Positions 21,979-32,474 of a DNA stretch of 64,000 nucleotides are shown here, one piece after another. The position numbers and the translations under genes were made by a program. The stretch lies in IMG/VR virus record IMGVR_UViG_3300038463_000730, positions 124,001-188,000 of that record. One strand, written 5' to 3'. The first letter of the stretch is position 1. Each line of letters opens with the position of its first letter. A model generated the notes under the pieces. The model was not told where the DNA came from. It did no database searches and saw only the letters and a list, made by a program, of their open reading frames with translations.

Positions 21979-24795
21979 TTATCCAGAAATTGTTCCGACG
22001 CTTGTCTGAATGTAGATCCAATTTACTGGGTAAGTTGGCTGGACCTGCACTGAAATATCCCACTGACGTGGTTCAACCGGATCACGCTTGACAATCAAAC
22101 TTGCAAATTTTGTAATCAAACCCTGTCCGATGAACGATGTTAGGAGACCTTCTGCTCGCGATGTGAGCGATGCGAGCAACGATGGATCTTCTGGCAATCC
22201 AATGTATCCCTGGAAGCCTGTACGTAGAGACTTCGCAATCGCATCACGAATGAATACGATCGACATCTCCTGCTCTTCTGGGAAACCACTGTTCGTAGTT
22301 GTCAATCCCTGGACAATCAATCCACCGCCCGATACTGGCTGAGCCAAACAGATTCCCGCAGTAACCAACTCGCGTTGAATGACTGGAGAGTACATGTCCG
22401 TGCTCGCAATCGTGAATCCGGACAAAACCTTGTTTGTCAACGGCATCGCGACATTTGGTGTACCGGAGTAGAAACCACCGGCCGCAGCTGCCATATAGAA
22501 TCCGTGAACCTGATTGAGCGATGTTCCGGCCTGGACCGTGATCGTATCAGGATAGAAATATTGGCAACGGAATGTGTCTCCAAATGCTGCATCGACTGAG
22601 TAGTTAGCTAGGTCGGAGATATCACCGTTCAGAATCTCTGTTACAGTGTTACCATGGATACCTTCCAAAACTCCCAAGCTCTCAACTGCCGCAAGCGTAT
22701 TTCCAAGAACATTGTCTACTGTCAAACCGGAGATAGCTCCGATCAACGCGACACGCTCATGCTTGTTCAGAATGTTGCTCTGTGTAATACAGTGAACAAC
22801 CGTGTTCTGGAAAATTGCAGAAATGGTCTGGTTTGGTAGTGGCACGACGATATCAACATCGACCGTTTCCAAAGAAGCCAAAGCGTTAATCCAACCAGCA
22901 TCGTAGAACGAAGCATCGCGTGCATCGACAATCGTAACTCGTAGTCCGTAACCGTTCGGTACGACCGACTGGTTGATCAAGATCTCAGAAGACGTGCTGC
23001 TCGTATCGACCACCTCGAACGTAACCTGTGTCTCGTCGAGGAAGAACTTGCTAATCTTTACAACCGATGTAGACGTGAACGCCGTAATCAGGAATGTACC
23101 GTTGTTACCTGGGTTAGTTGCATCCTGAATCACGACGTACTTACCAACCATTCCGCTGGTAAATGGCGCAGATGGCGCAGTCAACGTTGCCGTTGTGTAT
23201 GTCCCGTTGACAAACGGTGGAGCATCCTGATCCTGAGCACCGCGTGTAATCGTTACCGTACCGGCTCCGAATGGAACCGTCGTACCACCTAGGGTAGCAA
23301 GTGTTGCGCCGTTGATGAGTGGGTTTGTTTCGTTAACAAAGTCACCCGCTGTGATATACAGTTCACCGTTCAGTACTCCACCGACGAAGTATGTTCCAAT
23401 GTTCGAAGCATTGGTTGTGTCGAAAATATTAACTTCGTTCAATCCGCCGTTGTAATCGAGCTGCGTGAACAAGAATGTTCCGCTGCTGAGAGTCGCGACA
23501 CCAGGAATGTTGATCGAAGCTTCGAGGACACCGTCCTGTGCGTACTTCGTTACTTCTGGCTCTTCGATAACGGTATAGTCGTATCCGAAATCCGTTGTAT
23601 CGAAAACAAACTGACTAACAGTTGGGTCAGATCCGACCGTGTAGTACTCTACCTTGTTCGGGATGATCTGCTTCTCAACACCCGTTGTCGGATTCGTTAC
23701 GAAGAAGTGAATGTCTGAATTGAAATCCGGCACAACTCCTGTTGGAAGTGGGAAAAGATAATCTTCAACATTTGTGCTCGTCGCAACAACCTTATCCGAA
23801 AGGATGTACGATGTACGACGTGGGAGTGCTGGCGCGGTCTGCAATGCCATAACGCCTGGTGTGCCGTTTGCGAATGCAAGCTGAGCACCCATCGATAGAG
23901 CATTGTTCACGACAATTGAATCGGAGATATTTGCAGCCGGAGTGACACTTGGCGTACCGCAGTTCGCCGTGACATCCTTCATGCTTGTATAGAAAACTGG
24001 ATTATTGATGTCCGAGACCGCGATATAGCTAGCAGTCAACGAATCATTCTTGATTAGTGAACCACTCTGTACCTGGACCGTAAACATATCACCCTGAATA
24101 AAATCAGGGGCGCTGAGTGTCATGTCCTGAGCAATAGCGAATGACAAGATTCCGTTCGTTACAACGACACCGTCTGACAACCAAACAATCGGGTTGCCGT
24201 AACCGTCTAGTGGTGATCCGCTGATCGTACCGAAAGCTAGGAACCGTGCAGTCTGTGGGACCGGGTTACCGTAACCGTCACGCTGAACCGAGATGCACTT
24301 GATCGACCAAGTTTCGGTCGGTGCGTTCGTGTCCACAACAGCTAAGTTCTGAAGCGTGCCTTCACCTACGTTGATTGCTCCGGCTTTGTAGAACAAGCCA
24401 CCCTGGTCAACCAGGTAAGCTTGCTGCAACTCAATCTCGCCCGTGGTCGGGTCGAGACGATAGTCGAATGCATCACTAAATGTCCCGGAGTCAATCTTCT
24501 CTTCGATACCCTTGAGAAGGACTCCATTACGAAACAACTGTGTGCGATTAGCAATCTCTGGAAAGAGACTCAATAAGAAGTGTCGTCCATCCGCTCCCGA
24601 TACTGATGTATAGGTTGCGTTTAGTCCATCGTTCCCACCGCCGATAGCTGATGAAACGATAACTTCACTTCTCTGACCTTCGCCCATTATTGCGACGATT
24701 CGTGCGCCACCAGGAACAGAAACGCCTGTTGTCAGTGTTTCTACCTCTACATAAACGCCTGGTGTTGCATTACTTGCGCCTGGTATGTTAGCCAT
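21979..24795 (-). CDS. Contractile tail sheath protein with inserted domains, 938 aa
   Basis: N-terminal PGVYVEVET; C-terminal HERVALIG, PLTNKVLSGF, VQGLTT...EEQEMSIVFIRD, DISVQVQPTYPVNWIYI. Confidence 0.93.
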   Translation of the reverse strand: MANIPGASNATPGVYVEVETLTTGVSVPGGARIVAIMGEGQRSEVIVSSAIGGGNDGLNATYTSVSGADGRHFLLSLFPEIANRTQLFRNGVLLKGIEEKIDSGTFSDAFDYRLDPTTGEIELQQAYLVDQGGLFYKAGAINVGEGTLQNLAVVDTNAPTETWSIKCISVQRDGYGNPVPQTARFLAFGTISGSPLDGYGNPIVWLSDGVVVTNGILSFAIAQDMTLSAPDFIQGDMFTVQVQSGSLIKNDSLTASYIAVSDINNPVFYTSMKDVTANCGTPSVTPAANISDSIVVNNALSMGAQLAFANGTPGVMALQTAPALPRRTSYILSDKVVATSTNVEDYLFPLPTGVVPDFNSDIHFFVTNPTTGVEKQIIPNKVEYYTVGSDPTVSQFVFDTTDFGYDYTVIEEPEVTKYAQDGVLEASINIPGVATLSSGTFLFTQLDYNGGLNEVNIFDTTNASNIGTYFVGGVLNGELYITAGDFVNETNPLINGATLATLGGTTVPFGAGTVTITRGAQDQDAPPFVNGTYTTATLTAPSAPFTSGMVGKYVVIQDATNPGNNGTFLITAFTSTSVVKISKFFLDETQVTFEVVDTSSTSSEILINQSVVPNGYGLRVTIVDARDASFYDAGWINALASLETVDVDIVVPLPNQTISAIFQNTVVHCITQSNILNKHERVALIGAISGLTVDNVLGNTLAAVESLGVLEGIHGNTVTEILNGDISDLANYSVDAAFGDTFRCQYFYPDTITVQAGTSLNQVHGFYMAAAAGGFYSGTPNVAMPLTNKVLSGFTIASTDMYSPVIQRELVTAGICLAQPVSGGGLIVQGLTTTNSGFPEEQEMSIVFIRDAIAKSLRTGFQGYIGLPEDPSLLASLTSRAEGLLTSFIGQGLITKFASLIVKRDPVEPRQWDISVQVQPTYPVNWIYIQTSVGTISG

Positions 24796-24938: not shown

Positions 24939-25733
24939 TCAAAGATTAGATAGTATTTCTACCAAAGTCTGTTGGTAATTGATTTCTAGTCCAGGAGCGA
25001 CCTGTGAATTGGGGTTCGATAGGTCCCTGAAGTCGATGACAAAATTAAGAACTTCCAATACGTTCCGGATCGGGATATTACGTCTCCATTCCGAACGATA
25101 CGTAATAGACACAGTCTGCTTGAATAGCTTGTCGTTACGATCTTCGGTTTCCGTGCCAGCCCCCGCCGATACACCCTTAACGAAGAAACCTGCATTTTGT
25201 AGGTTTCCACGTTCAACGTCCTCGAACAAAATCGTAACCAGTTCGATCAGATCATCCCGAGATCGGAGACTTCGAGTCATGATATCGATCGTAATCGTGC
25301 CTTCGTAGCCTCCAGCATAGATAAACGACTGTGGAACCTTAAATGTCTTAATGTTCCCGAAGTTGTCTTTGTATACGTCCCAGTCCCATTGAATACTTGA
25401 CCGCTCGTTATTGAAAGATAGCGGTACGAACCTGGCTCCACCGTGACGAACGATGATCGCCGGGTAGAACACAACGTCGTAGCGATAGCTCTCGCCTATG
25501 AAGAGACGTGTCGAACGATCGTCGTGGTAGCCAGCATCCTGAGGAAGATCGGTTTGATCAGGAGTCTTAGGGAAGCCGTACTCGTCGTAGACGAAATGGT
25601 AGAATGAATCCTTATTAAAGAACTCTCGTAATGTCGCGACGACGATTTCCTTCGGGAACACAATCATGCTGTTCTGCATGATGTAGTTCAACCCAGGAAG
25701 ATCCGAACGATAGAAGTTATTTGTGGGGCACAT
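24939..25733 (-). CDS. Tail terminator / tail completion protein
   Basis: Directly upstream of the sheath; LFIGESYRYDVVFYPAIIVR, GTITIDIMTRSLRSRDDLIELV. Start moved to the ATG at 25733 (ORF track start 25760). Confidence 0.65.
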   Translation of the reverse strand: MCPTNNFYRSDLPGLNYIMQNSMIVFPKEIVVATLREFFNKDSFYHFVYDEYGFPKTPDQTDLPQDAGYHDDRSTRLFIGESYRYDVVFYPAIIVRHGGARFVPLSFNNERSSIQWDWDVYKDNFGNIKTFKVPQSFIYAGGYEGTITIDIMTRSLRSRDDLIELVTILFEDVERGNLQNAGFFVKGVSAGAGTETEDRNDKLFKQTVSITYRSEWRRNIPIRNVLEVLNFVIDFRDLSNPNSQVAPGLEINYQQTLVEILSNL

Positions 25734-25839
25734 CCTTATTTGATGCAAGAAAAGTAGCATCCGTCAGGATTGGCTTATTCAGTGCTACTTTAATTCCAAC
25801 TATCTTTTACGAGGCTCGTTCATAATCGGATGCTTTTAG

Positions 25840-25867
25840 TTGACATGTCGGAAAGTCGATCTACTCT
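25840..25867 (+). promoter_or_regulatory. Sigma70-like promoter for the lipoprotein gene
   Basis: TTGACA (25840-25845), 16-nt spacer, TACTCT (25862-25867); GGAG ribosome-binding site before the ATG at 25923. Confidence 0.6.
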
Positions 25868-25922
25868 ATGACGACGACCTCGAAACTGACCAAGCTATTC
25901 AACCAAGGACAGGGAGCTAGTC

Positions 25923-26597
25923 ATGCGACATGTAGCGAAATTCACTGTGATCTCGTGCCTTCTGAGCGGAATCGGGTGCGGCGGCACTCCTCAGACCACG
26001 GAAGTCGTCGTAAACAACCCCGGTTCCAGTGGCGGAACGGATGGCGGCTCTGGCTCCGGCTCTGGCTCCAGCTCAGGCGGCTCCGGCTCTTCTAGTGGCT
26101 CGGGGTCGGGGTCAGGCTCGGGCTCGTCGAGCGGCTCTTCCAGCGGTGGAGGGTCTGGTTCCAGCTCGGGCGGAAGCGAAGATGCAGGCGTTGACGCAGC
26201 CTGCCAAGGTCAGTTCGAATGTGGAGCGGCCGATACCAAATGTGGCACGTTCACTGACAACTGCGGCAACCCGGTCGTGTGCTCGTGTCAGGACACAACC
26301 TTCACGTGCGGAGCACCTGGGATCGTTGTGAACGATGCCGGAGAAACAACGGGTATTGCAACGAGCCCGACCCAGTGCGGGCTTGATTGCACCCAACATT
26401 TCGGGGCCGGTGGAGTCTGCCCAGGTCTAAGCTTACCGAACGCCGGAACGTCGTACTACTGCAACGACGGGCCGTACTACCTGACGTTGACGTTTACCCA
26501 GCGCTATCCGAATTGTAGCTACTACTCTTCGACGAGCCAATTCGTCGAGCACGACGCAGGAGTCCCGAGCGGACAAGCCGTGTTGTGCTGCGAATGA
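25923..26597 (+). CDS. Myxobacterial-style Cys-rich lipoprotein with Gly/Ser linker (moron)
   Basis: Signal peptide with lipobox-like LLSGIG|C, then a GSGSSSGG linker, DAG motifs and a Cys-rich domain; opposite strand to its neighbours and visibly more GC-rich. Confidence 0.8.
   Translation: MRHVAKFTVISCLLSGIGCGGTPQTTEVVVNNPGSSGGTDGGSGSGSGSSSGGSGSSSGSGSGSGSGSSSGSSSGGGSGSSSGGSEDAGVDAACQGQFECGAADTKCGTFTDNCGNPVVCSCQDTTFTCGAPGIVVNDAGETTGIATSPTQCGLDCTQHFGAGGVCPGLSLPNAGTSYYCNDGPYYLTLTFTQRYPNCSYYSSTSQFVEHDAGVPSGQAVLCCE
26022..26177 (+). repeat. Low-complexity Gly/Ser-coding repeat
   Basis: Degenerate GGCTC(T/C/G) hexamers encoding GSGSGSGSSSGG. Confidence 0.8.
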
Positions 26598-29500
26598 TTA
26601 CATCCGTGTTGGATCTAGATTGTAGATCGACACGTTGATAATCGGCGCTGCCCAAGAAGCGTAAGCCAATCCGGACGGATCAGGAGACTGAATCTGAAGG
26701 ATATAGCTAAAACTCGAATCGTCCAGCACAAGGCCGCCTGGTATGGTGCATACATATGTACCAACGCTCGGTGTTGTCCCGCTCCAAGAGAACGTGGCTC
26801 CTTGTGCTGTATTGGTCGCTCCAGGGCCATTTATGGATAGAGTAATCGGCGTAGATGCTCCCTGGTTATTCGGGTACGCATAGAGCGAAATAGACGGACC
26901 AGCGGTCCATGGTTTTCCAGGATGTCCTAGTGCGTAGGTAATGTTAAAGCTATTCATCGTAGATCCATTCGGGAATCTCGAAATAGCAAGCTGCATTTGC
27001 CCTGCGCTACCTGCCGTACCGTCAAGCGTTGAGAACAAAGTCGTTCCCGGTCCTCCAGCGCCAAGGTTTCCGCTGTAACCGTAGGTGACGGAAGCACCAC
27101 CGACATAACCGCCCCAGATAGCTGGCTGGCATATGTTCCGCACAACCGGAACAATCAACGGTGGAATGTTTTCAGAGTAACTGTGCAGGTTGGCAAGATT
27201 TGAACGAATCAACGATGCACTGTTGCTGTAGACAACCAATGTATAGTTGGAAGCGCCATCTACCGTTTCTGAATCGAAGAAGTTGCCAGTAACACTTACA
27301 AGTCCTGACGAAGACGTAACATTAATGTAAGACGCGATTACATTCGTGTAACGATAGAATTGGTTACCCGTAATCGTGCATTGACGTCCGTTGACTCCGT
27401 AATATGTGATGAACGTTCCGGTGCCGGATTGGTTGAGGCAACCGTCGAACGTGTTATCCGTGATCGACCCACCCGGAGCCATGAATACACAGTTGTCGTA
27501 ATAGTAAATCGTTTGTGGCGTTAGAGTGTTGTCCGTGTGAGAACCGACGAAGAACATGTTTCCACTGATTTTCACGTTTCCAACGTCTCCGCCCGAACCT
27601 GAGTTCGCATCGCAACGAATAGCCGAATTCGATGGAGTTCCACGATCCTCTAGAGCGTCTACGTTTCCTATGTAGTTCCCAAGGAACGTCGTCGAGTAAG
27701 CCAGGAATCGATTATTCAATATCTGGAGTGTCGTGGCGTGCGTCGAGAGCGTTGTCGTATCATTATTGCCGATTTGCGCCTGAACCCAGTTAACCGTGTT
27801 CTCGCGAATGATAGTCGAGCCGATCCAGTACGTTCCGTCGCCACCAGTCTGGTAGCGGTGAAGACCGTCCTCGCAGGCCGTAGCAATCAAGTGACACGAG
27901 TTACCTGCGATGATCAGCGTCTCGTCCTTGTCACGAGTTAGCTGGCTCAAGTTCGGTGTGTTGCGTGGATAATCGAGCTGGTGCCAGTACAGAATCGCAC
28001 CGCACACGTTATTTTCGATGTGAACGTTGATCATTGCGGTAGATGATCCGGGAGACGAACCGTTTCGCTGTGCGCCCAAGAAAATCATCTGATTCTTGTC
28101 ACAATAGTTTTTATTGATGTGACAGTTGATAAGTTTCGGAGCTTCGTTGCCGCTCGTATACCCGGCCGGGTGACCAGTTAGAAGCGCAAACGCCGGAGCC
28201 AAATCATCTACCGATGTCGTAGATATGAACTGATTATTCTCGATGTAGAAGTTCGACAGAAATGTGTCAGCCGCAGCATTAGCTTGAACGGCGTAGAACG
28301 AGATTACTGGGTAACGATTGACCGTTGTCGTTGTAAACTTACAGTTACGAATATAGATGTTCTGAATGGTTTGGTCTGAGAACAAACCAGCGATTGCTCC
28401 ATACGTAGCCGAGCTAACAGTGGGAGGAGGTGTCTGAGGCGATGATGGACCGGTGCAGTTGACTAGGTAAGACGACGACCACGTTGCATCATTTGTTGCA
28501 TCGTAATTGTACGTGATGTTACATCCGTCGAACGTTGTGTTGCTTTTAACATTGAAACCAGTCTGACCGTTCACAGTTATTGTGCAACCCTTGAAGCTTG
28601 CAAAAGACCCGGCAGCAAAAGATAAGAACGCTCCAGGGGCAAGGCTCATCGTGCAGCCATTGAACGCCATCGTCATGCCAGAAGATATCGTGATTGTGTT
28701 TACAGCTGCAAAGATAATGTTGCAATTATTGAACGTTACGTTGCCACCGTTGGTAAGCATCGCCAACGTGGTACCGAAATTAAACGTACAGTTATTGAAC
28801 GTTACTTGCCCACCTTCAAAGAAGTTGATGCCGTACCCGTCATTGAAAGTACAGTTATTGAATGTTGATACGCTTCCTGCCTGGAAAGCTAGACCGGTGA
28901 ATCCGCCACCAAGGAATGTAAACGTTATGTTTTCAAAATTGGCAACTGAAAACATATCAAATAGTGAGTTTGCCTGAAAAACAAAGGCCCCAGCTCCATC
29001 ACCAATAAAATCAACTGGTTGAGGATAACTCAGTGTCAAAGCGCCAAGAATTGAATTGCTGCCTTTTACTTTGATGCGAGATTCGTAAGACGAATTGTAT
29101 TTGAGATACGCATTAACCACTGCAAACTGTGAGAAGTTCCCAGTGCTCGGGTCCGCGCTCAACACTGGGGAGATGTTCTGATCCGAGTTCCGAATGAATT
29201 TACGAACGTCGGTCACAAACGCCGATGCGCCCTGCTGATTGAATAGATAGAGTGGTGTCAAATCTTTGCGTGTATTGAGCAAAGATGAGAATGTTGTTGA
29301 ATCAACCGGGTACGATACAAGTGTCGTTGGATTGTAAAGAGTAAGCAATCGACCAGGATTGTTTATCGCATTGACCGTAGTGTCGTAGTCCGTAATAGGA
29401 ATGGTCTGAATCTCTGCTTTTTGGTTAACACAGATAACCCAGTTCACACCGTTGATTGGCGTTCCGCCGTTGTTGTCTTGAACAGCCGGGATATTAACAG

Positions 29501-32474
29501 TGAAGTTGTTGATTTCCTTAACAACTCCATTGACCAATACTGCTCCGCCCTGGAATGTTGCCGCGAGCGCCGTATGGCTATTTAGAGCAAGTCCACGAAG
29601 GACACCATTCTGACTTACGTTAGCTGGCGCAGCCGCAATGTACTGTAGAGCCGAGGTCGATAGTTCATTCTCGGTCACACCACCAAACTGGCGTCCATCT
29701 TGGATAAACGTAATTTGCTGATTTGAGCCGTTTAGTTGTCCGGCGCCGAGGTAGAAGACCTGACTGTCGAGACGCAACGATGGGAACAAATCGATGTTCA
29801 ACTGAACTGGCACAGACGGTGGATTGAACGAGATCGGAACTGTCAATGCATCGTAATCTGCCAGATTTACGATCATATCGATGTAATCAATACCCGTTTC
29901 ATCGTAGAAACGAACAACTTCGCCCTGTTTCCCGGTGATCGTTGCACCAAGATTGGAAGAAATCGTGTTGCACAGATTGCCCGAGAAGATACCGGTTGTT
30001 GCATTCCATGCTGTTAGATTAAATAGGATTGATGTTGATGAATTGGTTAGATTATCAATGTTGTTGGAATAGCCACGCAATTTCGGCCCAACGCCAATAA
30101 TGTTGAATCGAACTAGGTTGGCATCACCGGTTGTCAAATTGACACGCGCACGCTCTGAACTGAACGTATGTCCGGTCGAATCAACGAAGAACTCGAAGTA
30201 TCGTTTGAACGAGCTGCCATCATTTGTCGCATTGACAAGGTTCAACGCATCAAACCCAATAGAGTTCTCAGAGTAGTATATGGCTACATTGATTCCAGTA
30301 GATGAAACCGATACCGGAGTCCCAACAGCGTAGATGCAGCTGTAAACTTCGATTGTTGTTGACATGATAACCGAATCACATGTTGTGAACGATATACTGT
30401 CAATAATAAAACGTCCGTAATCAGTGTCGTTATACGCCGGAGAACTAAACGGTAGAAGCGGCTGTATCAAAATAGTTTTGCCAGGTGTCAAACCATATTT
30501 AGATAGGTCCTGGTTAACATTGTATGTTGCTCGGACCGTGATACCTGGCGTGATCGTCTTTGAAATGATCGAGCCCATCCAGTAACCGTCGCCGTTTACG
30601 TCAAAATAACCATCCGCTGGTTCAATCGTATTGAGGCTAGATTTGGCCTGACCATTTACGTAGTAATTCTTGTTTACTAGCGGTAAGAATATCTGCGTAG
30701 GAAACTGCGCTTGCTGAATAGATGCAAAACTGCTCTGATACGGTGGGCTTGCTACGTTAGCATTGCTTTTCCCTAATCCTAATGGATCAGGTCCGCCTAG
30801 AGCGTCACCGATTACGTTATTTGAGAACGAACCGGCACCAAGAACACCTCCGGTAGAAACCGTTCCGTTAATAACTGAGAAACCAGCTCCATTCGTTGCG
30901 TCGGTCATCGCAATACCGAAGTTTCCGTCGTGCTGGTATGCTATGAAACGATAGTTGTAGCCAGGAGCAGCGAATGCATCGTTTGTTGCGGCAATGATCG
31001 TATCGATCGTATAGGCACCGGGAGTCGTGCCCTGGTTTCCGGTCACGTCGATTGGTGGCATGGTCTGCACACGGTCAGTCGGGTTACCAGTTGGATAGAC
31101 AGCTAGATACAAATTGTAGTTTGTTGGTCCGAACTCAGAGGCGGTAAAATCAATTCCTAATGCACTGGCCGCGCGTGGATCCGATACCGTTACGCTTGGC
31201 AATGCGTCGAACGTGTTGTTCGTCTGAGCCAATGCCATAACGCCTGACGTTGCCTGCACTGCAATTGGCGCATCGATACGAGCAACGGCTGTAGACGAAT
31301 CAATGATGTTTCGACCGTTGATACGCACGTAGTAGGAACGGTTAGGTGGAGAGTAACCGTCGTAAGATGCTCGTGCTGACTCAATGATGTATTGAGCCTG
31401 AACTGTTCCATAGTTGACCGTTATGATCTGTCCTGGTTTGACAGAAGAAAACATCGAGTCAAAATTGAATGTCGGATCCTGTGGCGGAATGAACTGAATA
31501 ACGTCGTCACCGTAGGTATTGTTGTCTACCGGGCTACCAGCGTTACCACCTGAACCATTATCGTGCAAGAACGTCTTGCATAATGTGAATGGAACGATCT
31601 CCTGGCTTGAACCGGTGTATCCGTCATCAGTCGAATTGAGCAACGTTCCACGACATGTGCGCGGAATGTTGTTTCCGTGTTCATCCTGTTGGTGGATCGT
31701 CAATCCGATGAAACTTGTTGTATCAACGAAGTTAGCGAACTCTTGAACGTTCTCAACTGTTTTCGGAATGACTACGAAGTTTGTCGAGTTTAGCGAGATA
31801 CCGGCACCGACGTGTCCGTATTGGTTTGGAATGTTGCCAGTGTGAACATTGCCATCGGCAAGTTCGTGGCTAACCAAGTCCTGATTGATGTTGAAAAGGA
31901 ACAAGGCGAGATTCGATCCGCGCAATAGACCATTGCGATCGGTCGGAGCGTGGCCACCTGGCCATGTGAAGCTCGGGTCTCGTGGATCGGTAGGTGCAGC
32001 ATTGATATCGATGTGAGAAACAACGTGGCGACCCGATTCGCCACCTGAGAGCGGCCCGACACCGGTAATGTGCTTGATGAAATCTAGTTGGGTTGTGCTG
32101 GCAAGCGTCTGAACAGCATTGATCTGTGTTCCGAGTACCTGGATATCGTTGTAGAGCGACTGTGTTGAGTAAGCCAGCGCGATCTTCGATTCCTGAATTC
32201 CGGCACCGGGAGCAATCTGTGCATCAGTAAACTGCGTTACACTGATTGCGTGCAATATAGCAGATGGCCTTAGATAACCGTACGGATCGATCGATACTTC
32301 TAGGCGAGCTGCGATTGATCCAACCGCTCCCGAACCTCCGATTCCGATTTCGTTTTCGATGGCAAAAATAGCCGATCGACATTGATCAATAGCCAACCCT
32401 CCGAGTTGTGTGACGTCATCGTCTACTCGAATAATTGTCGAATCATCATCTAGAGAAAATGGGTAATTGCTCAT
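26598..32474 (-). CDS. Large tail fibre/spike protein with C-terminal parallel beta-helix, 1958 aa
   Basis: Virion-attachment-type N-terminus (MSNYPFSLDD...AIFAIENEIG); repeated (V/S)TFNNC(T/N) and I.GN.F beta-helix rungs in the C-terminal ~40%. Confidence 0.75.
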   Translation of the reverse strand: MSNYPFSLDDDSTIIRVDDDVTQLGGLAIDQCRSAIFAIENEIGIGGSGAVGSIAARLEVSIDPYGYLRPSAILHAISVTQFTDAQIAPGAGIQESKIALAYSTQSLYNDIQVLGTQINAVQTLASTTQLDFIKHITGVGPLSGGESGRHVVSHIDINAAPTDPRDPSFTWPGGHAPTDRNGLLRGSNLALFLFNINQDLVSHELADGNVHTGNIPNQYGHVGAGISLNSTNFVVIPKTVENVQEFANFVDTTSFIGLTIHQQDEHGNNIPRTCRGTLLNSTDDGYTGSSQEIVPFTLCKTFLHDNGSGGNAGSPVDNNTYGDDVIQFIPPQDPTFNFDSMFSSVKPGQIITVNYGTVQAQYIIESARASYDGYSPPNRSYYVRINGRNIIDSSTAVARIDAPIAVQATSGVMALAQTNNTFDALPSVTVSDPRAASALGIDFTASEFGPTNYNLYLAVYPTGNPTDRVQTMPPIDVTGNQGTTPGAYTIDTIIAATNDAFAAPGYNYRFIAYQHDGNFGIAMTDATNGAGFSVINGTVSTGGVLGAGSFSNNVIGDALGGPDPLGLGKSNANVASPPYQSSFASIQQAQFPTQIFLPLVNKNYYVNGQAKSSLNTIEPADGYFDVNGDGYWMGSIISKTITPGITVRATYNVNQDLSKYGLTPGKTILIQPLLPFSSPAYNDTDYGRFIIDSISFTTCDSVIMSTTIEVYSCIYAVGTPVSVSSTGINVAIYYSENSIGFDALNLVNATNDGSSFKRYFEFFVDSTGHTFSSERARVNLTTGDANLVRFNIIGVGPKLRGYSNNIDNLTNSSTSILFNLTAWNATTGIFSGNLCNTISSNLGATITGKQGEVVRFYDETGIDYIDMIVNLADYDALTVPISFNPPSVPVQLNIDLFPSLRLDSQVFYLGAGQLNGSNQQITFIQDGRQFGGVTENELSTSALQYIAAAPANVSQNGVLRGLALNSHTALAATFQGGAVLVNGVVKEINNFTVNIPAVQDNNGGTPINGVNWVICVNQKAEIQTIPITDYDTTVNAINNPGRLLTLYNPTTLVSYPVDSTTFSSLLNTRKDLTPLYLFNQQGASAFVTDVRKFIRNSDQNISPVLSADPSTGNFSQFAVVNAYLKYNSSYESRIKVKGSNSILGALTLSYPQPVDFIGDGAGAFVFQANSLFDMFSVANFENITFTFLGGGFTGLAFQAGSVSTFNNCTFNDGYGINFFEGGQVTFNNCTFNFGTTLAMLTNGGNVTFNNCNIIFAAVNTITISSGMTMAFNGCTMSLAPGAFLSFAAGSFASFKGCTITVNGQTGFNVKSNTTFDGCNITYNYDATNDATWSSSYLVNCTGPSSPQTPPPTVSSATYGAIAGLFSDQTIQNIYIRNCKFTTTTVNRYPVISFYAVQANAAADTFLSNFYIENNQFISTTSVDDLAPAFALLTGHPAGYTSGNEAPKLINCHINKNYCDKNQMIFLGAQRNGSSPGSSTAMINVHIENNVCGAILYWHQLDYPRNTPNLSQLTRDKDETLIIAGNSCHLIATACEDGLHRYQTGGDGTYWIGSTIIRENTVNWVQAQIGNNDTTTLSTHATTLQILNNRFLAYSTTFLGNYIGNVDALEDRGTPSNSAIRCDANSGSGGDVGNVKISGNMFFVGSHTDNTLTPQTIYYYDNCVFMAPGGSITDNTFDGCLNQSGTGTFITYYGVNGRQCTITGNQFYRYTNVIASYINVTSSSGLVSVTGNFFDSETVDGASNYTLVVYSNSASLIRSNLANLHSYSENIPPLIVPVVRNICQPAIWGGYVGGASVTYGYSGNLGAGGPGTTLFSTLDGTAGSAGQMQLAISRFPNGSTMNSFNITYALGHPGKPWTAGPSISLYAYPNNQGASTPITLSINGPGATNTAQGATFSWSGTTPSVGTYVCTIPGGLVLDDSSFSYILQIQSPDPSGLAYASWAAPIINVSIYNLDPTRM

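What the first reader, a model, noticed from the sequence alone, without database searches (positions are those of the whole stretch)
25840..26597. Host-like myxobacterial lipoprotein moron inserted antisense in the tail operon
It has its own TTGACA-N16-TACTCT promoter, a lipobox, a Gly/Ser linker, DAG motifs and a Cys-rich domain, an architecture typical of myxobacterial (Polyangiaceae-like) surface lipoproteins. It is more GC-rich than its flanks, and its stop codon abuts the stop of the 1958-aa fibre gene with no gap. It points to a myxobacterial host, for which few large phages are described. It could act in superinfection exclusion or, since Myxococcus exchanges outer-membrane lipoproteins via TraAB, be passed to neighbouring cells.
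Basis: partly seen in the sequence, partly recalled or inferred. Interest (0 to 1): 0.62.

Follow-up and report, generated by a model that had tools for sequence, protein, structure and literature searches.

The report
Orphan lipoprotein gene beside phage fibre tip
A giant uncultivated phage carries a real gene, found nowhere else, for a lipid-anchored cysteine-rich envelope protein, set backwards right after the receptor-binding end of its tail-fibre gene; it is most plausibly a shield against re-infection, and it has no detectable myxobacterial (or any other) relatives.

Summary
Window 25923-26597 (+) is a sound 224-aa ORF. It has an SD, a type II signal peptide (Cys19), a 53-aa Gly/Ser tether and a 138-aa domain with 14 Cys. 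Its GC is 60.7% against 48% for the genome, and its stop touches the stop of the 1958-aa beta-helix fibre gene. In relatives with about 48% identical sheaths, the fibre gene and the next tail gene lie side by side, so this gene is a lineage-specific insertion.

The 'host-like myxobacterial' reading is not supported. Pfam, PHROG, NCBIfam and PADLOC give nothing. Two curated myxococcal Cys-repeat models, the PDB, a word search of 5.8 billion proteins and an exhaustive phmmer over 1.84 billion representatives also find nothing. Six-frame searches of 301 Myxococcota genomes give only noise.

A myxobacterial host is favoured independently, but not secured, by a phage-encoded ribosomal protein bL12 that groups with Polyangiaceae-type sequences.

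The most likely function (about 0.35) is a superinfection-exclusion or 'lytic conversion' lipoprotein matched to the equally unique fibre tip. This rests on analogy with T5 Llp, Rtp45, Cor and Ltp. Expression is untested.

A 19-nt inverted repeat brackets the insert and remains unexplained.

The parts
25840..25867 (+). Promoter-like site TTGACA-N16-TACTCT, 55 nt upstream of the ATG
   Evidence: Read directly from the sequence. The -10 matches at 3 of 6 positions and the consensus scan did not call it. It is one of only 3 TTGACA-N15-18-TANNNT sites in non-coding DNA in the 434-kb record.
25912..25916 (+). Shine-Dalgarno GGGAG, 6 nt before the start codon
   Evidence: SD-like motifs precede 36% of ORFs of at least 100 aa, against a 10% background.
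25923..26597 (+). ORF for the 224-aa lipoprotein precursor (P0001)
   Evidence: It is the only open frame and the only one with positive codon LLR. JGI's annotation called the same gene.
25923..25979 (+). Type II signal peptide with lipobox S-G-I-G-C19. The +2, +3 and +4 residues are Gly, Gly, Thr.
   Evidence: Fits a PROSITE PS51257-style rule applied. No dedicated SPII predictor was available.
26019..26180 (+). Gly/Ser-rich tether (residues about 33-86), encoded by imperfect 6-, 12- and 18-nt repeats
26181..26594 (+). Orphan C-terminal domain (residues 87-224) with 14 Cys and three DAG motifs. The AF2 single-sequence model is unusable.
   Evidence: pLDDT 39. No relatives were found.
26598..32474 (-). 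1958-aa tail fibre or tailspike gene with a right-handed beta-helix. Its last 185-215 residues are unique to this phage.
24939..25733 (-). Conserved 264-aa tail-module gene. Its true start is at 25733. In relatives it follows the fibre gene directly.
21979..24795 (-). 938-aa tail sheath gene, which anchors the tail-module context
   Evidence: PHROG 2839. tblastn matches annotated sheath genes.
25759..25777 (.). Left arm of a 19-nt inverted repeat (18 of 19 positions complementary) that brackets the insert
26662..26680 (.). Right arm of the inverted repeat. It lies inside the fibre gene (codons D-P-S-G-L-A-Y), 20 codons before the stop.
   Evidence: and the codon reading.

Best explanation
What is shown. 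This is a real, lineage-specific orphan gene of an uncultivated giant myovirus. The contig is 503 kb, and at least 473 kb of it looks like phage. The gene encodes an exported, lipid-anchored protein with four parts: a type II signal peptide, lipidated Cys19, a flexible Gly/Ser tether of about 53 residues, and a 138-residue domain whose 14 cysteines suggest folding in an oxidising compartment. It was inserted on the opposite strand at a junction that varies among related phages, directly after the unique, receptor-binding end of the tail-fibre gene.

What is inferred. Because it points against the late tail operon and has its own SD and a possible sigma-70-like promoter, it is probably transcribed on its own, either early or constitutively. 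Its product probably acts at the host envelope. The most likely role is a superinfection-exclusion or 'lytic conversion' lipoprotein that masks or distorts the receptor or entry route used by the adjacent fibre tip. That would protect the infected cell and keep progeny from being lost on cell debris. T5 Llp acts this way on FhuA, Rtp45 on LptDE, Cor on FhuA, and Ltp on the tape-measure protein.
For: The gene is real:
- It is the only open frame of six, and the only one with a positive codon score. The C-domain scores 0.135 per codon, against 0.164 +/- 0.12 for phage genes.
- It has an SD and a lipobox.
- It has an even number of Cys, at 10% of residues.
- Identical copies occur in four assemblies from at least three samples.

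It is an insertion:
- In L007, L010 and L008 the fibre gene and the 264-aa gene are 4-20 nt apart on one strand.
- L014 and L009 carry other extra genes at this spot.
- None carries this gene.

Link to the fibre tip:
- The stops abut.
- Fibre homology to relatives ends at about residue 1745-1775.
- The tip has no relative in the word search, just as the lipoprotein has none.

Analogy:
- In T5, llp lies next to the receptor-binding gene oad, on the opposite strand, with its own promoter.
- Superinfection-exclusion lipoprotein genes typically sit beside receptor-binding genes (PMC9586334; PMC12685063).
- Ltp is built as lipid anchor, then Ser-rich spacer, then effector domain (PMC3952083).

Lifestyle:
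- No integrase or resolvase is found in the 434-kb record, so a lytic-cycle role fits better than lysogenic conversion.
Against: - There is no homology to any known exclusion protein or defence family.
- The mature protein has about 205 residues, against about 60 for Llp, Cor and Rtp45.
- The arrangement with the fibre gene is convergent, whereas T5 is divergent.
- The promoter is weak, and no terminator is predicted above chance.
- No usable structure model could be made.
- The host and the receptor are unknown.
- The fibre's receptor-binding role is inferred only from its beta-helix and its variable C-terminus.
Confidence: 0.35

Rival explanations
1. The gene was captured from a GC-rich myxobacterial host and still works as a host-type surface lipoprotein. 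It would act in host fitness, adhesion, or as a shareable good passed between cells by TraAB outer-membrane exchange.
For: - The gene's GC3 is 0.65. That is above the phage mean of 0.52 and almost equal to the GC3 (0.64) of the phage's bL12 gene, which is certainly of cellular origin. Myxococcota rplL genes have GC3 of 0.73-0.97.
- bL12 groups with a Polyangiaceae MAG and two 'delta proteobacterium' MAGs (99/91).
- The best language-model neighbour is a 150-aa hypothetical cluster that is 'commonest Myxococcota', but its score of 0.75 is below the noise level.
- A type II signal alone suffices for outer-membrane exchange in M. xanthus (PMC3325183).
Against: - No homologue was found among 1.84 billion representatives or 5.8 billion clusters.
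- 301 Myxococcota-phylum genomes give only noise, as does the Pseudomonadota control.
- The myxococcal Cys-repeat models do not match.
- Codon usage lies inside the phage's own range.
- Much of the excess GC comes from Gly, Ser, Ala, Cys and Pro codons.
Confidence: 0.12
2. The insert is, or descends from, an invertible cassette of the Mu G / P1 C type. Recombination between the 19-nt inverted repeats would flip a 922-bp segment. That would change the fibre's last residues and turn the lipoprotein gene into the same direction as the late tail operon, acting as an on/off or timing switch.
For: - The 19-nt inverted repeat (18 of 19) is the longest in the 434-kb record, and its arms lie at 25759-25777 and 26662-26680, just outside the insert.
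- The local chance expectation is about 2e-4.
- One arm lies inside the fibre reading frame, as the gix and cix sites do.
- A second, perfect 10-nt inverted pair is nested in the same order (25855-25864 and 26622-26631).
Against: - Genome-wide, one repeat of this length is expected about 0.3-0.5 times by chance.
- No Resolvase or Phage_integrase domain occurs in the 434-kb record, and none is listed in the further 38 kb of the contig that was read.
- After inversion the fibre frame would run only 4 more codons, so there is no alternative tip.
- All four assemblies share one orientation.
- The inverted junction is absent from the metagenome and viral contig collections, while the control junction was found.
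Confidence: 0.08
3. It is a lysis or egress accessory, for example an outer-membrane spanin-like lipoprotein, or a lipoprotein that aids fibre maturation or release at the envelope.
For: It has a lipobox and probable outer-membrane targeting, with no Asp at +2 (the rule is from E. coli and is used here as an inference). Phage spanin outer-membrane subunits are lipoproteins (general knowledge).
Against: - There is no partner inner-membrane spanin gene, and no holin or endolysin nearby. The neighbours are the fibre, a conserved tail protein and the sheath.
- There is no C-terminal membrane helix, so it is not a unimolecular spanin.
- It is far larger and richer in Cys than known o-spanins.
- It is absent from all relatives, which must still lyse their hosts.
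- A second, classic small lipoprotein exists elsewhere in the genome (G000 409305-409643).
Confidence: 0.05
4. It is a non-functional or chance ORF in a spacer between two tail genes.
For: It is an orphan with no variation among copies, so purifying selection cannot be measured. The structure model has low confidence.
Against: - A 235-codon open frame at 60% GC has a chance of about 5e-4 (my estimate).
- Only this frame has a positive coding score.
- The SD, the n-h-c signal peptide with lipobox, the even Cys count and the tether-plus-domain layout are jointly improbable by chance.
Confidence: 0.05

Closest known systems
T5 Llp (lytic conversion lipoprotein), with the related small exclusion lipoproteins Cor (T1, phi80, N15) and Rtp45
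   Same: - It is a phage-encoded lipoprotein.
- The gene lies immediately beside the receptor-binding tail gene, on the opposite strand from it. In T5, oad is on the minus strand at 108427-110349 and llp on the plus strand at 110429-110662.
- It has its own promoter region.
- Both the gene and the neighbouring binding domain are lineage-specific.
   Different: - There is no sequence similarity.
- The mature protein has about 205 residues against about 60.
- It has a long Gly/Ser tether and 14 Cys.
- It is convergent with the fibre gene (stop to stop), not divergent.
- The host is not an enterobacterium.
- The function is untested.
Ltp of Streptococcus thermophilus phage TP-J34
   Same: The three-part build is the same: lipid anchor, Ser-rich spacer, effector domain (PMC3952083). 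It too is a phage-borne accessory gene acting outside the cytoplasm.
   Different: - Ltp's effector is a pair of helix-turn-helix-like repeats that bind the tape-measure protein; here the domain is Cys-rich and unrelated.
- No Pfam hit was found even at E up to 10.
- Ltp sits in the lysogeny module of a temperate phage of a Gram-positive host, not next to a fibre gene.
Morons in the lambdoid sense (extra gene with its own signals between conserved genes, e.g. lambda bor)
   Same: It is an extra gene between two genes that are adjacent in relatives. Its composition differs from the flanks. Its direction of transcription is independent.
   Different: The promoter is only a weak match and no terminator is evident. 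The phage shows no integrase, so prophage-expressed 'conversion' is doubtful.
Invertible tail-fibre segments (Mu G/Gin, P1 C/Cin)
   Same: Inverted repeats flank a segment at the 3' end of a fibre gene, and one repeat lies inside the fibre reading frame. Convergent genes lie inside the segment.
   Different: - No invertase was found.
- No alternative fibre tip is encoded.
- Only one orientation is seen.
Myxobacterial outer-membrane-exchange cargo lipoproteins (CglB, Tgl, SitA toxins)
   Same: It has a type II signal and is probably located in the outer membrane. The host may be in Myxococcota.
   Different: There is no homology to any of them (one search found no relative at all). The myxococcal Cys-repeat models are negative.

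Membership tests
Bacterial or phage lipoprotein (type II signal peptide) | Positively charged n-region, hydrophobic h-region, and lipobox [LVI..][ASTG..][GAS]-C with the Cys at position 15-35 | tested here: met
   MRHVAK-FTVISCLLSGIG-C19 fits the PROSITE PS51257-style rule coded. The -3 residue is Gly rather than the classic Leu.
Bacterial or phage lipoprotein (type II signal peptide) | Actual lipidation and cleavage by signal peptidase II | not testable with these tools
   This needs globomycin or palmitate labelling.
T5 Llp / Cor / Rtp45-type exclusion lipoproteins | Gene adjacent to the receptor-binding tail protein gene | tested here: met
   The stop codons abut the 1958-aa beta-helix fibre gene. 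T5 layout. General rule: PMC9586334.
T5 Llp / Cor / Rtp45-type exclusion lipoproteins | Sequence or profile similarity to Llp, Cor or Rtp45 | tested here: not met
   No Pfam, PHROG, NCBIfam or PADLOC family matched. tblastn against 50,697 phage records was empty.
T5 Llp / Cor / Rtp45-type exclusion lipoproteins | Small mature protein (about 6-8 kDa) that binds the periplasmic face of the receptor and blocks adsorption | tested here: not met
   On size: the mature protein has about 205 residues. Binding and blocking cannot be tested here.
Ltp-type exclusion lipoproteins | Lipid anchor plus Ser-rich spacer | tested here: met
   Cys19 plus a Gly/Ser tether at residues about 34-86. The Ltp build is described in PMC3952083.
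Ltp-type exclusion lipoproteins | Ltp repeat (helix-turn-helix-like) effector domain | tested here: not met
   No Pfam hit for residues 85-224 at E up to 10.
Myxococcal Cys-rich repeat proteins (TIGR04201 Myxo_Cys_RPT; TIGR02232 myxo_disulf_rpt) | Match to the curated repeat models | tested here: not met
   The six-frame search of the whole record gave no hit at the gene. hmmscan of the protein against NCBIfam at E up to 10 gave none.
Host-derived (myxobacterial) gene | Detectable homologues in Myxococcota genomes, closer than in other phyla | tested here: not met
   6 of 301 genomes gave hits at E 0.003-0.01, four of them with internal stops. The control phylum gave 2 of 301. The exhaustive phmmer search found only the protein itself.
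Moron | Extra gene between genes that are adjacent in related phages | tested here: met
   L007, L010 and L008 have the fibre and 264-aa genes adjacent. The gene is found only in identical copies of this phage.
Moron | Own promoter and terminator | tested here: inconclusive
   TTGACA-N16-TACTCT is present, but the -10 matches at 3 of 6 and the site was not called. No terminator was found above chance.
Invertible fibre segment (Gin/Cin type) | Inverted repeats flanking the segment, one of them within the fibre gene | tested here: met
   19-nt inverted repeat at 25759-25777 and 26662-26680.
Invertible fibre segment (Gin/Cin type) | Site-specific recombinase, and both orientations present in the population | tested here: not met
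   No PF00239 or PF00589 hit. Only one orientation occurs in four assemblies. The inverted junction is absent from the contig collections. Read-level data were not available.
Outer-membrane spanin subunit | Small lipoprotein gene embedded in or next to an inner-membrane spanin gene within a lysis cassette | tested here: not met
   The neighbours are tail genes only. The gene is absent in relatives.

The most novel reading that the evidence does not exclude
The 19-nt inverted repeats mark a working (or recently working) inversion switch in a roughly 0.5-Mb phage of Myxococcota. The switch would couple the extreme C-terminus of the receptor-binding fibre to the expression timing of a new class of tethered, disulfide-rich exclusion lipoprotein. 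In other words, it would be a phase-variable 'fibre tip plus self-protection' module of a kind not described before.
Probability: 0.06. Interest if true: 0.75.

Novelty: new variant of a known kind. Interest (0 to 1): 0.4.

Why it matters
If the function is as proposed, the rule that an exclusion lipoprotein sits beside the receptor-binding gene would extend beyond small coliphages. It would then cover a giant soil phage, with a protein of a quite different build: a long tether and a 14-Cys domain. Such a protein could be used as bait to find the unknown receptor of an uncultivated phage.

The side result may matter as much. The contig is a roughly 0.5-Mb phage that IMG/VR cut as a 'provirus'. 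Its own bL12 leans towards Myxococcota, a phylum for which few phages, and no megaphage that I know of, have been described.

The negative result also matters. Composition and motif 'feel' suggested a host origin that exhaustive searches do not bear out.

Tried and rejected
- Structure. An AF2 single-sequence model of residues 85-224 gave pLDDT 39. The Atlas's own model has pLDDT 0.46, and its structural neighbours all have TM below 0.45. No fold search was run, because it would be meaningless on such a model.
- Host from prophage relatives. The sheath alignment found no relative in 185,579 species genomes. Among isolated phages the sheath matches only distantly, at 23-28% over the C-terminal part, to actinophage cluster C phages and Bacillus phage G. 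This says nothing about the host.
- Host from Ku. The nearest named cellular hits are Binatia, Acidobacteriota and Chloroflexota at 36-39% identity. This is not informative, and it does not support Myxococcota.
- AU tests on the 111-row quick tree. They were uninformative because the constrained searches found better trees than the free search.
- AU test on the careful tree. Placing the phage with Verrucomicrobiota is 22.7 lnL worse but is not rejected (p 0.19).
- My first bL12 tree used wrongly extracted frames and was discarded.
- My first shuffle test of the inverted repeat counted palindromes. It was replaced by the test.
- High-GC3 phage ORFs (P0123, P0124) were examined as possible recent host genes. 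They are Ala/Pro/Lys-rich proteins with no family match, and I did not pursue them.
- The 5' UTR shows no unusual RNA structure (z 0.66).
Full report
**The object**

Window 25923-26597 on the plus strand is a 224-codon ORF. Every long neighbour lies on the minus strand:
- a 1958-aa protein with a right-handed beta-helix (26598-32474; PF13229);
- a conserved 264-aa protein (24939-25733; its true start follows from comparison with relatives);
- a 938-aa tail sheath (21979-24795; PHROG 2839; tblastn to annotated sheaths).

The plus-strand TGA at 26595-26597 touches the minus-strand TAA at 26600-26598. The finding's coordinates and its description of the layout are therefore correct.

**Is it a gene?**

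- Of the six frames over the interval, only this one is open. The others carry 4-8 stops.
- Only this frame has a positive codon log-likelihood under a model trained on the phage's long ORFs. It scores 0.079 per codon overall and 0.135 for the C-terminal domain, against 0.164 +/- 0.12 for phage genes of 150-300 aa.
- GGGAG lies 6 nt before the ATG.
- The N-terminus, MRHVAK-FTVISCLLSGIG-C19, passes a PROSITE-style lipobox rule. Among 610 ORFs of the record only one other convincing protein passes it: a 112-aa protein with LLVGC.
- The tether (residues about 34-86) is the only Gly/Ser-rich stretch in the proteome.
- The last 138 residues hold 14 Cys, which is 10% against 1.5% for the proteome. 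They also hold three DAG motifs against 0.06 expected.
- JGI's annotation calls the same gene.

I take the gene as real, with probability about 0.9.

**Signals**

Its -10 hexamer matches at only 3 of 6 positions, and the scan did not list it. TTGACA is not enriched in this genome or in its non-coding DNA. Of the ten TTGACA-N15-18-TANNNT sites in the record, three lie in the 7.8% of the genome that is non-coding, and this is one of them. That is a weak hint. No terminator stands out, and the 5' UTR is not unusually structured. Independent transcription is therefore plausible from the gene's orientation, but it is not shown.

**Composition**

The gene's GC is 0.607, in the top 2% of ORFs. The tether has GC 0.70 and the C-domain 0.58. 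GC3 is 0.65 against 0.52 +/- 0.086 for the genome. Part of the excess comes from Gly, Ser, Ala, Cys and Pro codons. The phage's own bL12 gene, which is certainly of cellular origin, has almost the same GC3 (0.64), while Myxococcota rplL genes have 0.73-0.97. The composition is thus compatible with an old capture from a GC-rich donor. It does not prove one.

**The genome**

The window lies in a 434,688-bp IMG/VR 'provirus' cut out of a 502,994-bp JGI contig. The record has 48.2% GC and 24 tRNA genes, one of them with a CUA anticodon. Beyond the IMG/VR cut, the contig continues as far as 472.9 kb with the following:
- HNH and GIY-YIG endonucleases;
- two bL12-like genes;
- rIIA- and rIIB-like genes;
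- Ku and a ligase OB domain;
- a methyltransferase;
- many small orphan ORFs.

No integrase or resolvase domain occurs in the 434-kb record. I read this as one giant, probably lytic, phage, and I regard the 'provirus' boundary as an artefact, probably triggered by the ribosomal protein gene.

**Insertion**

Eleven viral contigs carry a sheath relative. One of them is the same phage. The others are 47-53% identical.
- In L007, L010 and L008, the fibre gene is followed within 4-20 nt by the homologue of the 264-aa gene, on the same strand.
- L014 has two extra fibre-tip-like paralogues at this position. L009 has two other genes. L011 has a small HNH-like ORF.
- None has the lipoprotein gene.

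The junction is therefore a hotspot for change, and the gene is specific to this lineage. The four assemblies that hold it are identical over 9-19 kb, so selection cannot be measured.

**The fibre tip**

Similarity of the fibre to its relatives stops at about residue 1745-1775. The last 185-215 residues match none of them, nor anything of comparable length among the 5.8 billion clusters. The orphan lipoprotein gene thus abuts an orphan fibre tip.

**Relatives of the protein**

None was found in any of these searches:
- Pfam, PHROG, NCBIfam and PADLOC;
- PDB sequences at E up to 10;
- tblastn against 50,697 phage records;
- the word search over 5.8 billion clusters;
- IMG/VR;
- an exhaustive phmmer of residues 85-224 over 1.84 billion representatives.

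The two curated myxococcal Cys-repeat models do not hit the gene.

A six-frame search of 301 genomes from the phylum that contains a Polyangiaceae MAG gave six hits at E 0.003-0.01. About three are expected by chance, and four of the six had internal stops. The same search of 301 genomes from the phylum of a Mesorhizobium gave two. The language-model neighbour labelled 'commonest Myxococcota' scores 0.75, which is below the level that shuffled proteins reach a third of the time.

The claim that the protein is 'host-like' or 'typical of myxobacterial lipoproteins' therefore has no support from homology. The short Cys motifs may resemble motifs that I recall from myxobacterial proteins, but that is memory, not a test.

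**Host**

The phage's 125-aa bL12 (L025:6212-6589, minus strand) finds as its best matches, among species genomes, a Polyangiaceae MAG and two 'delta proteobacterium' MAGs of 5.9-9.0 Mb.
- A careful maximum-likelihood tree of 81 sequences joins the phage to these three, with support 99/91.
- The 'delta' MAG and the Polyangiaceae MAG draw the same phylum sample, so they belong to one phylum.
- When the 30 best sequences of that phylum are added, the phage sits inside their clade, with supports of 83-94.
- An AU test on the careful tree does not reject a grouping with Verrucomicrobiota (22.7 lnL worse, p 0.19). The tests on the quick tree were uninformative.
- Ku points elsewhere, at low identity.
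- The many phage tRNAs that read A-ending codons fit a host richer in GC than the phage. This is an inference from a known pattern.

I put a Myxococcota host at roughly 0.5. It is favoured but not established, and the evidence for it does not come from the lipoprotein.

**Mechanism**

Shown:
- an exported, probably lipid-anchored protein;
- a long flexible tether;
- a Cys-rich domain that would need an oxidising compartment;
- a lineage-specific gene placed against the late operon, next to the variable fibre end.

Inferred:
- separate expression, probably early;
- location in the outer membrane (no Asp at +2, by the E. coli rule);
- action on the route of entry used by this phage's own fibre.

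The model comes from known cases. T5 llp lies beside the receptor-binding gene oad on the opposite strand, with its own promoter, and it locks FhuA from the periplasmic side (PMC9586334). Rtp45 does the same to LptDE (PMC12685063). Exclusion lipoprotein genes are generally found next to receptor-binding genes (PMC9586334). Ltp has the same anchor, Ser-rich spacer and effector build (PMC3952083).

I give this reading about 0.35. The rivals are listed with their evidence in the Rival explanations section.

**An unexplained feature**

A 19-nt inverted repeat (18 of 19 positions) has its arms at 25759-25777 and 26662-26680.
- The left arm lies 26-44 nt upstream of the 264-aa gene.
- The right arm lies inside the fibre gene, 20 codons before its stop.
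- It is the longest such repeat in the record. One of that length is expected about 0.3-0.5 times per genome by chance, but only about 2e-4 times in this 1.4-kb region.
- A perfect 10-nt inverted pair is nested inside it in the same order.

Inversion would make the fibre end ...DPSGLAYSVLL instead of ...DPSGLAYASWAAPIINVSIYNLDPTRM. It would also turn the lipoprotein gene into the direction of the operon.

I found no recombinase. All assemblies show a single orientation. The inverted junction is absent from the contig collections, while the control junction was found. The repeat may be a scar of how the insert arose, a decayed invertible cassette, or chance. Only reads can decide.

**Verdict**

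The 'moron in the tail module' reading is supported. The 'host-like myxobacterial protein' reading is not. The myxobacterial host is independently favoured but unproven. The function is a reasoned analogy. I file the finding as a new variant of a known kind, namely phage lipoproteins placed beside receptor-binding genes, and I rate its interest as moderate.

Noticed in passing
window 25759-25777 and 26662-26680 (also 25855-25864 and 26622-26631): A 19-nt inverted repeat (18 of 19), the longest in the 434-kb record, brackets the inserted gene. One arm lies inside the fibre reading frame. A perfect 10-nt inverted pair is nested in the same order. It could be a scar, a decayed invertible cassette, or chance.
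   Followed up: partly
JGI contig Ga0436665_0000001, positions 434.8-472.9 kb (loci L025, L116, L147, L148): The sequence beyond the IMG/VR 'provirus' end is phage-like: HNH and GIY-YIG endonucleases, rIIA- and rIIB-like genes, Ku plus a ligase OB domain, a methyltransferase, and orphan ORFs. The provirus call looks like an artefact, and the phage genome is probably near 0.5 Mb. The last 30 kb were not read.
   Followed up: partly
L025:6212-6589 (-) and L025:9591-10004 (+): The phage encodes a full ribosomal protein bL12 (125 aa) and a second, divergent bL12-like protein (137 aa). The first groups with Polyangiaceae-type sequences (99/91), but an AU test cannot exclude Verrucomicrobiota.
   Followed up: yes
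G000 266843-420001, chiefly 339-351 kb and 373.6-374.8 kb (outside the window): There are 24 tRNA genes. One has anticodon CUA (it would read TAG), and it lies next to three tRNA-like genes for which ARAGORN reports odd two-base anticodons. No recoding was apparent in the ORFs I read, and none was assumed.
   Followed up: no
e.g. window 10000 (-) and 5554 (-); G000 16174, 105977, 291076, 348711, 418186: The motif (C)CGNTATATAG is enriched upstream of genes: 9 occurrences against 0.6 expected for TATATAG. In about ten cases it ends only 6-7 nt before the ATG. This suggests a phage-specific promoter that gives leaderless or near-leaderless mRNAs. The lipoprotein gene does not have it.
   Followed up: partly
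G000 409305-409643 (-): This is the only other convincing lipoprotein in the record: 112 aa, MKKVVTASLCLTLLVG-C, with a classic lipobox. Its function is unknown. Its neighbours include a TPM-domain protein.
   Followed up: no
loci L014:7036-8986 and L009:3526-4977: In related phages the same fibre/264-aa junction holds other extra genes: two paralogous fibre-tip-like proteins of 321 and 326 aa in L014, and proteins of 358 and 124 aa in L009. Several relatives' fibre-type proteins end in a shared ...(I/L)(T/K)Y(T/V)W motif, which this phage's fibre lacks.
   Followed up: partly
window 29728-29745 and 30435-30452: An 18-nt inverted repeat (17 of 18) lies inside the fibre gene. It is within the number expected by chance genome-wide.
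   Followed up: no
L147:4436-6168 (+): Adjacent Ku and DNA-ligase-OB genes form a phage-borne end-joining pair. The closest relatives of Ku (54-85% identity) sit on short metagenome contigs, presumably from related phages.
   Followed up: no
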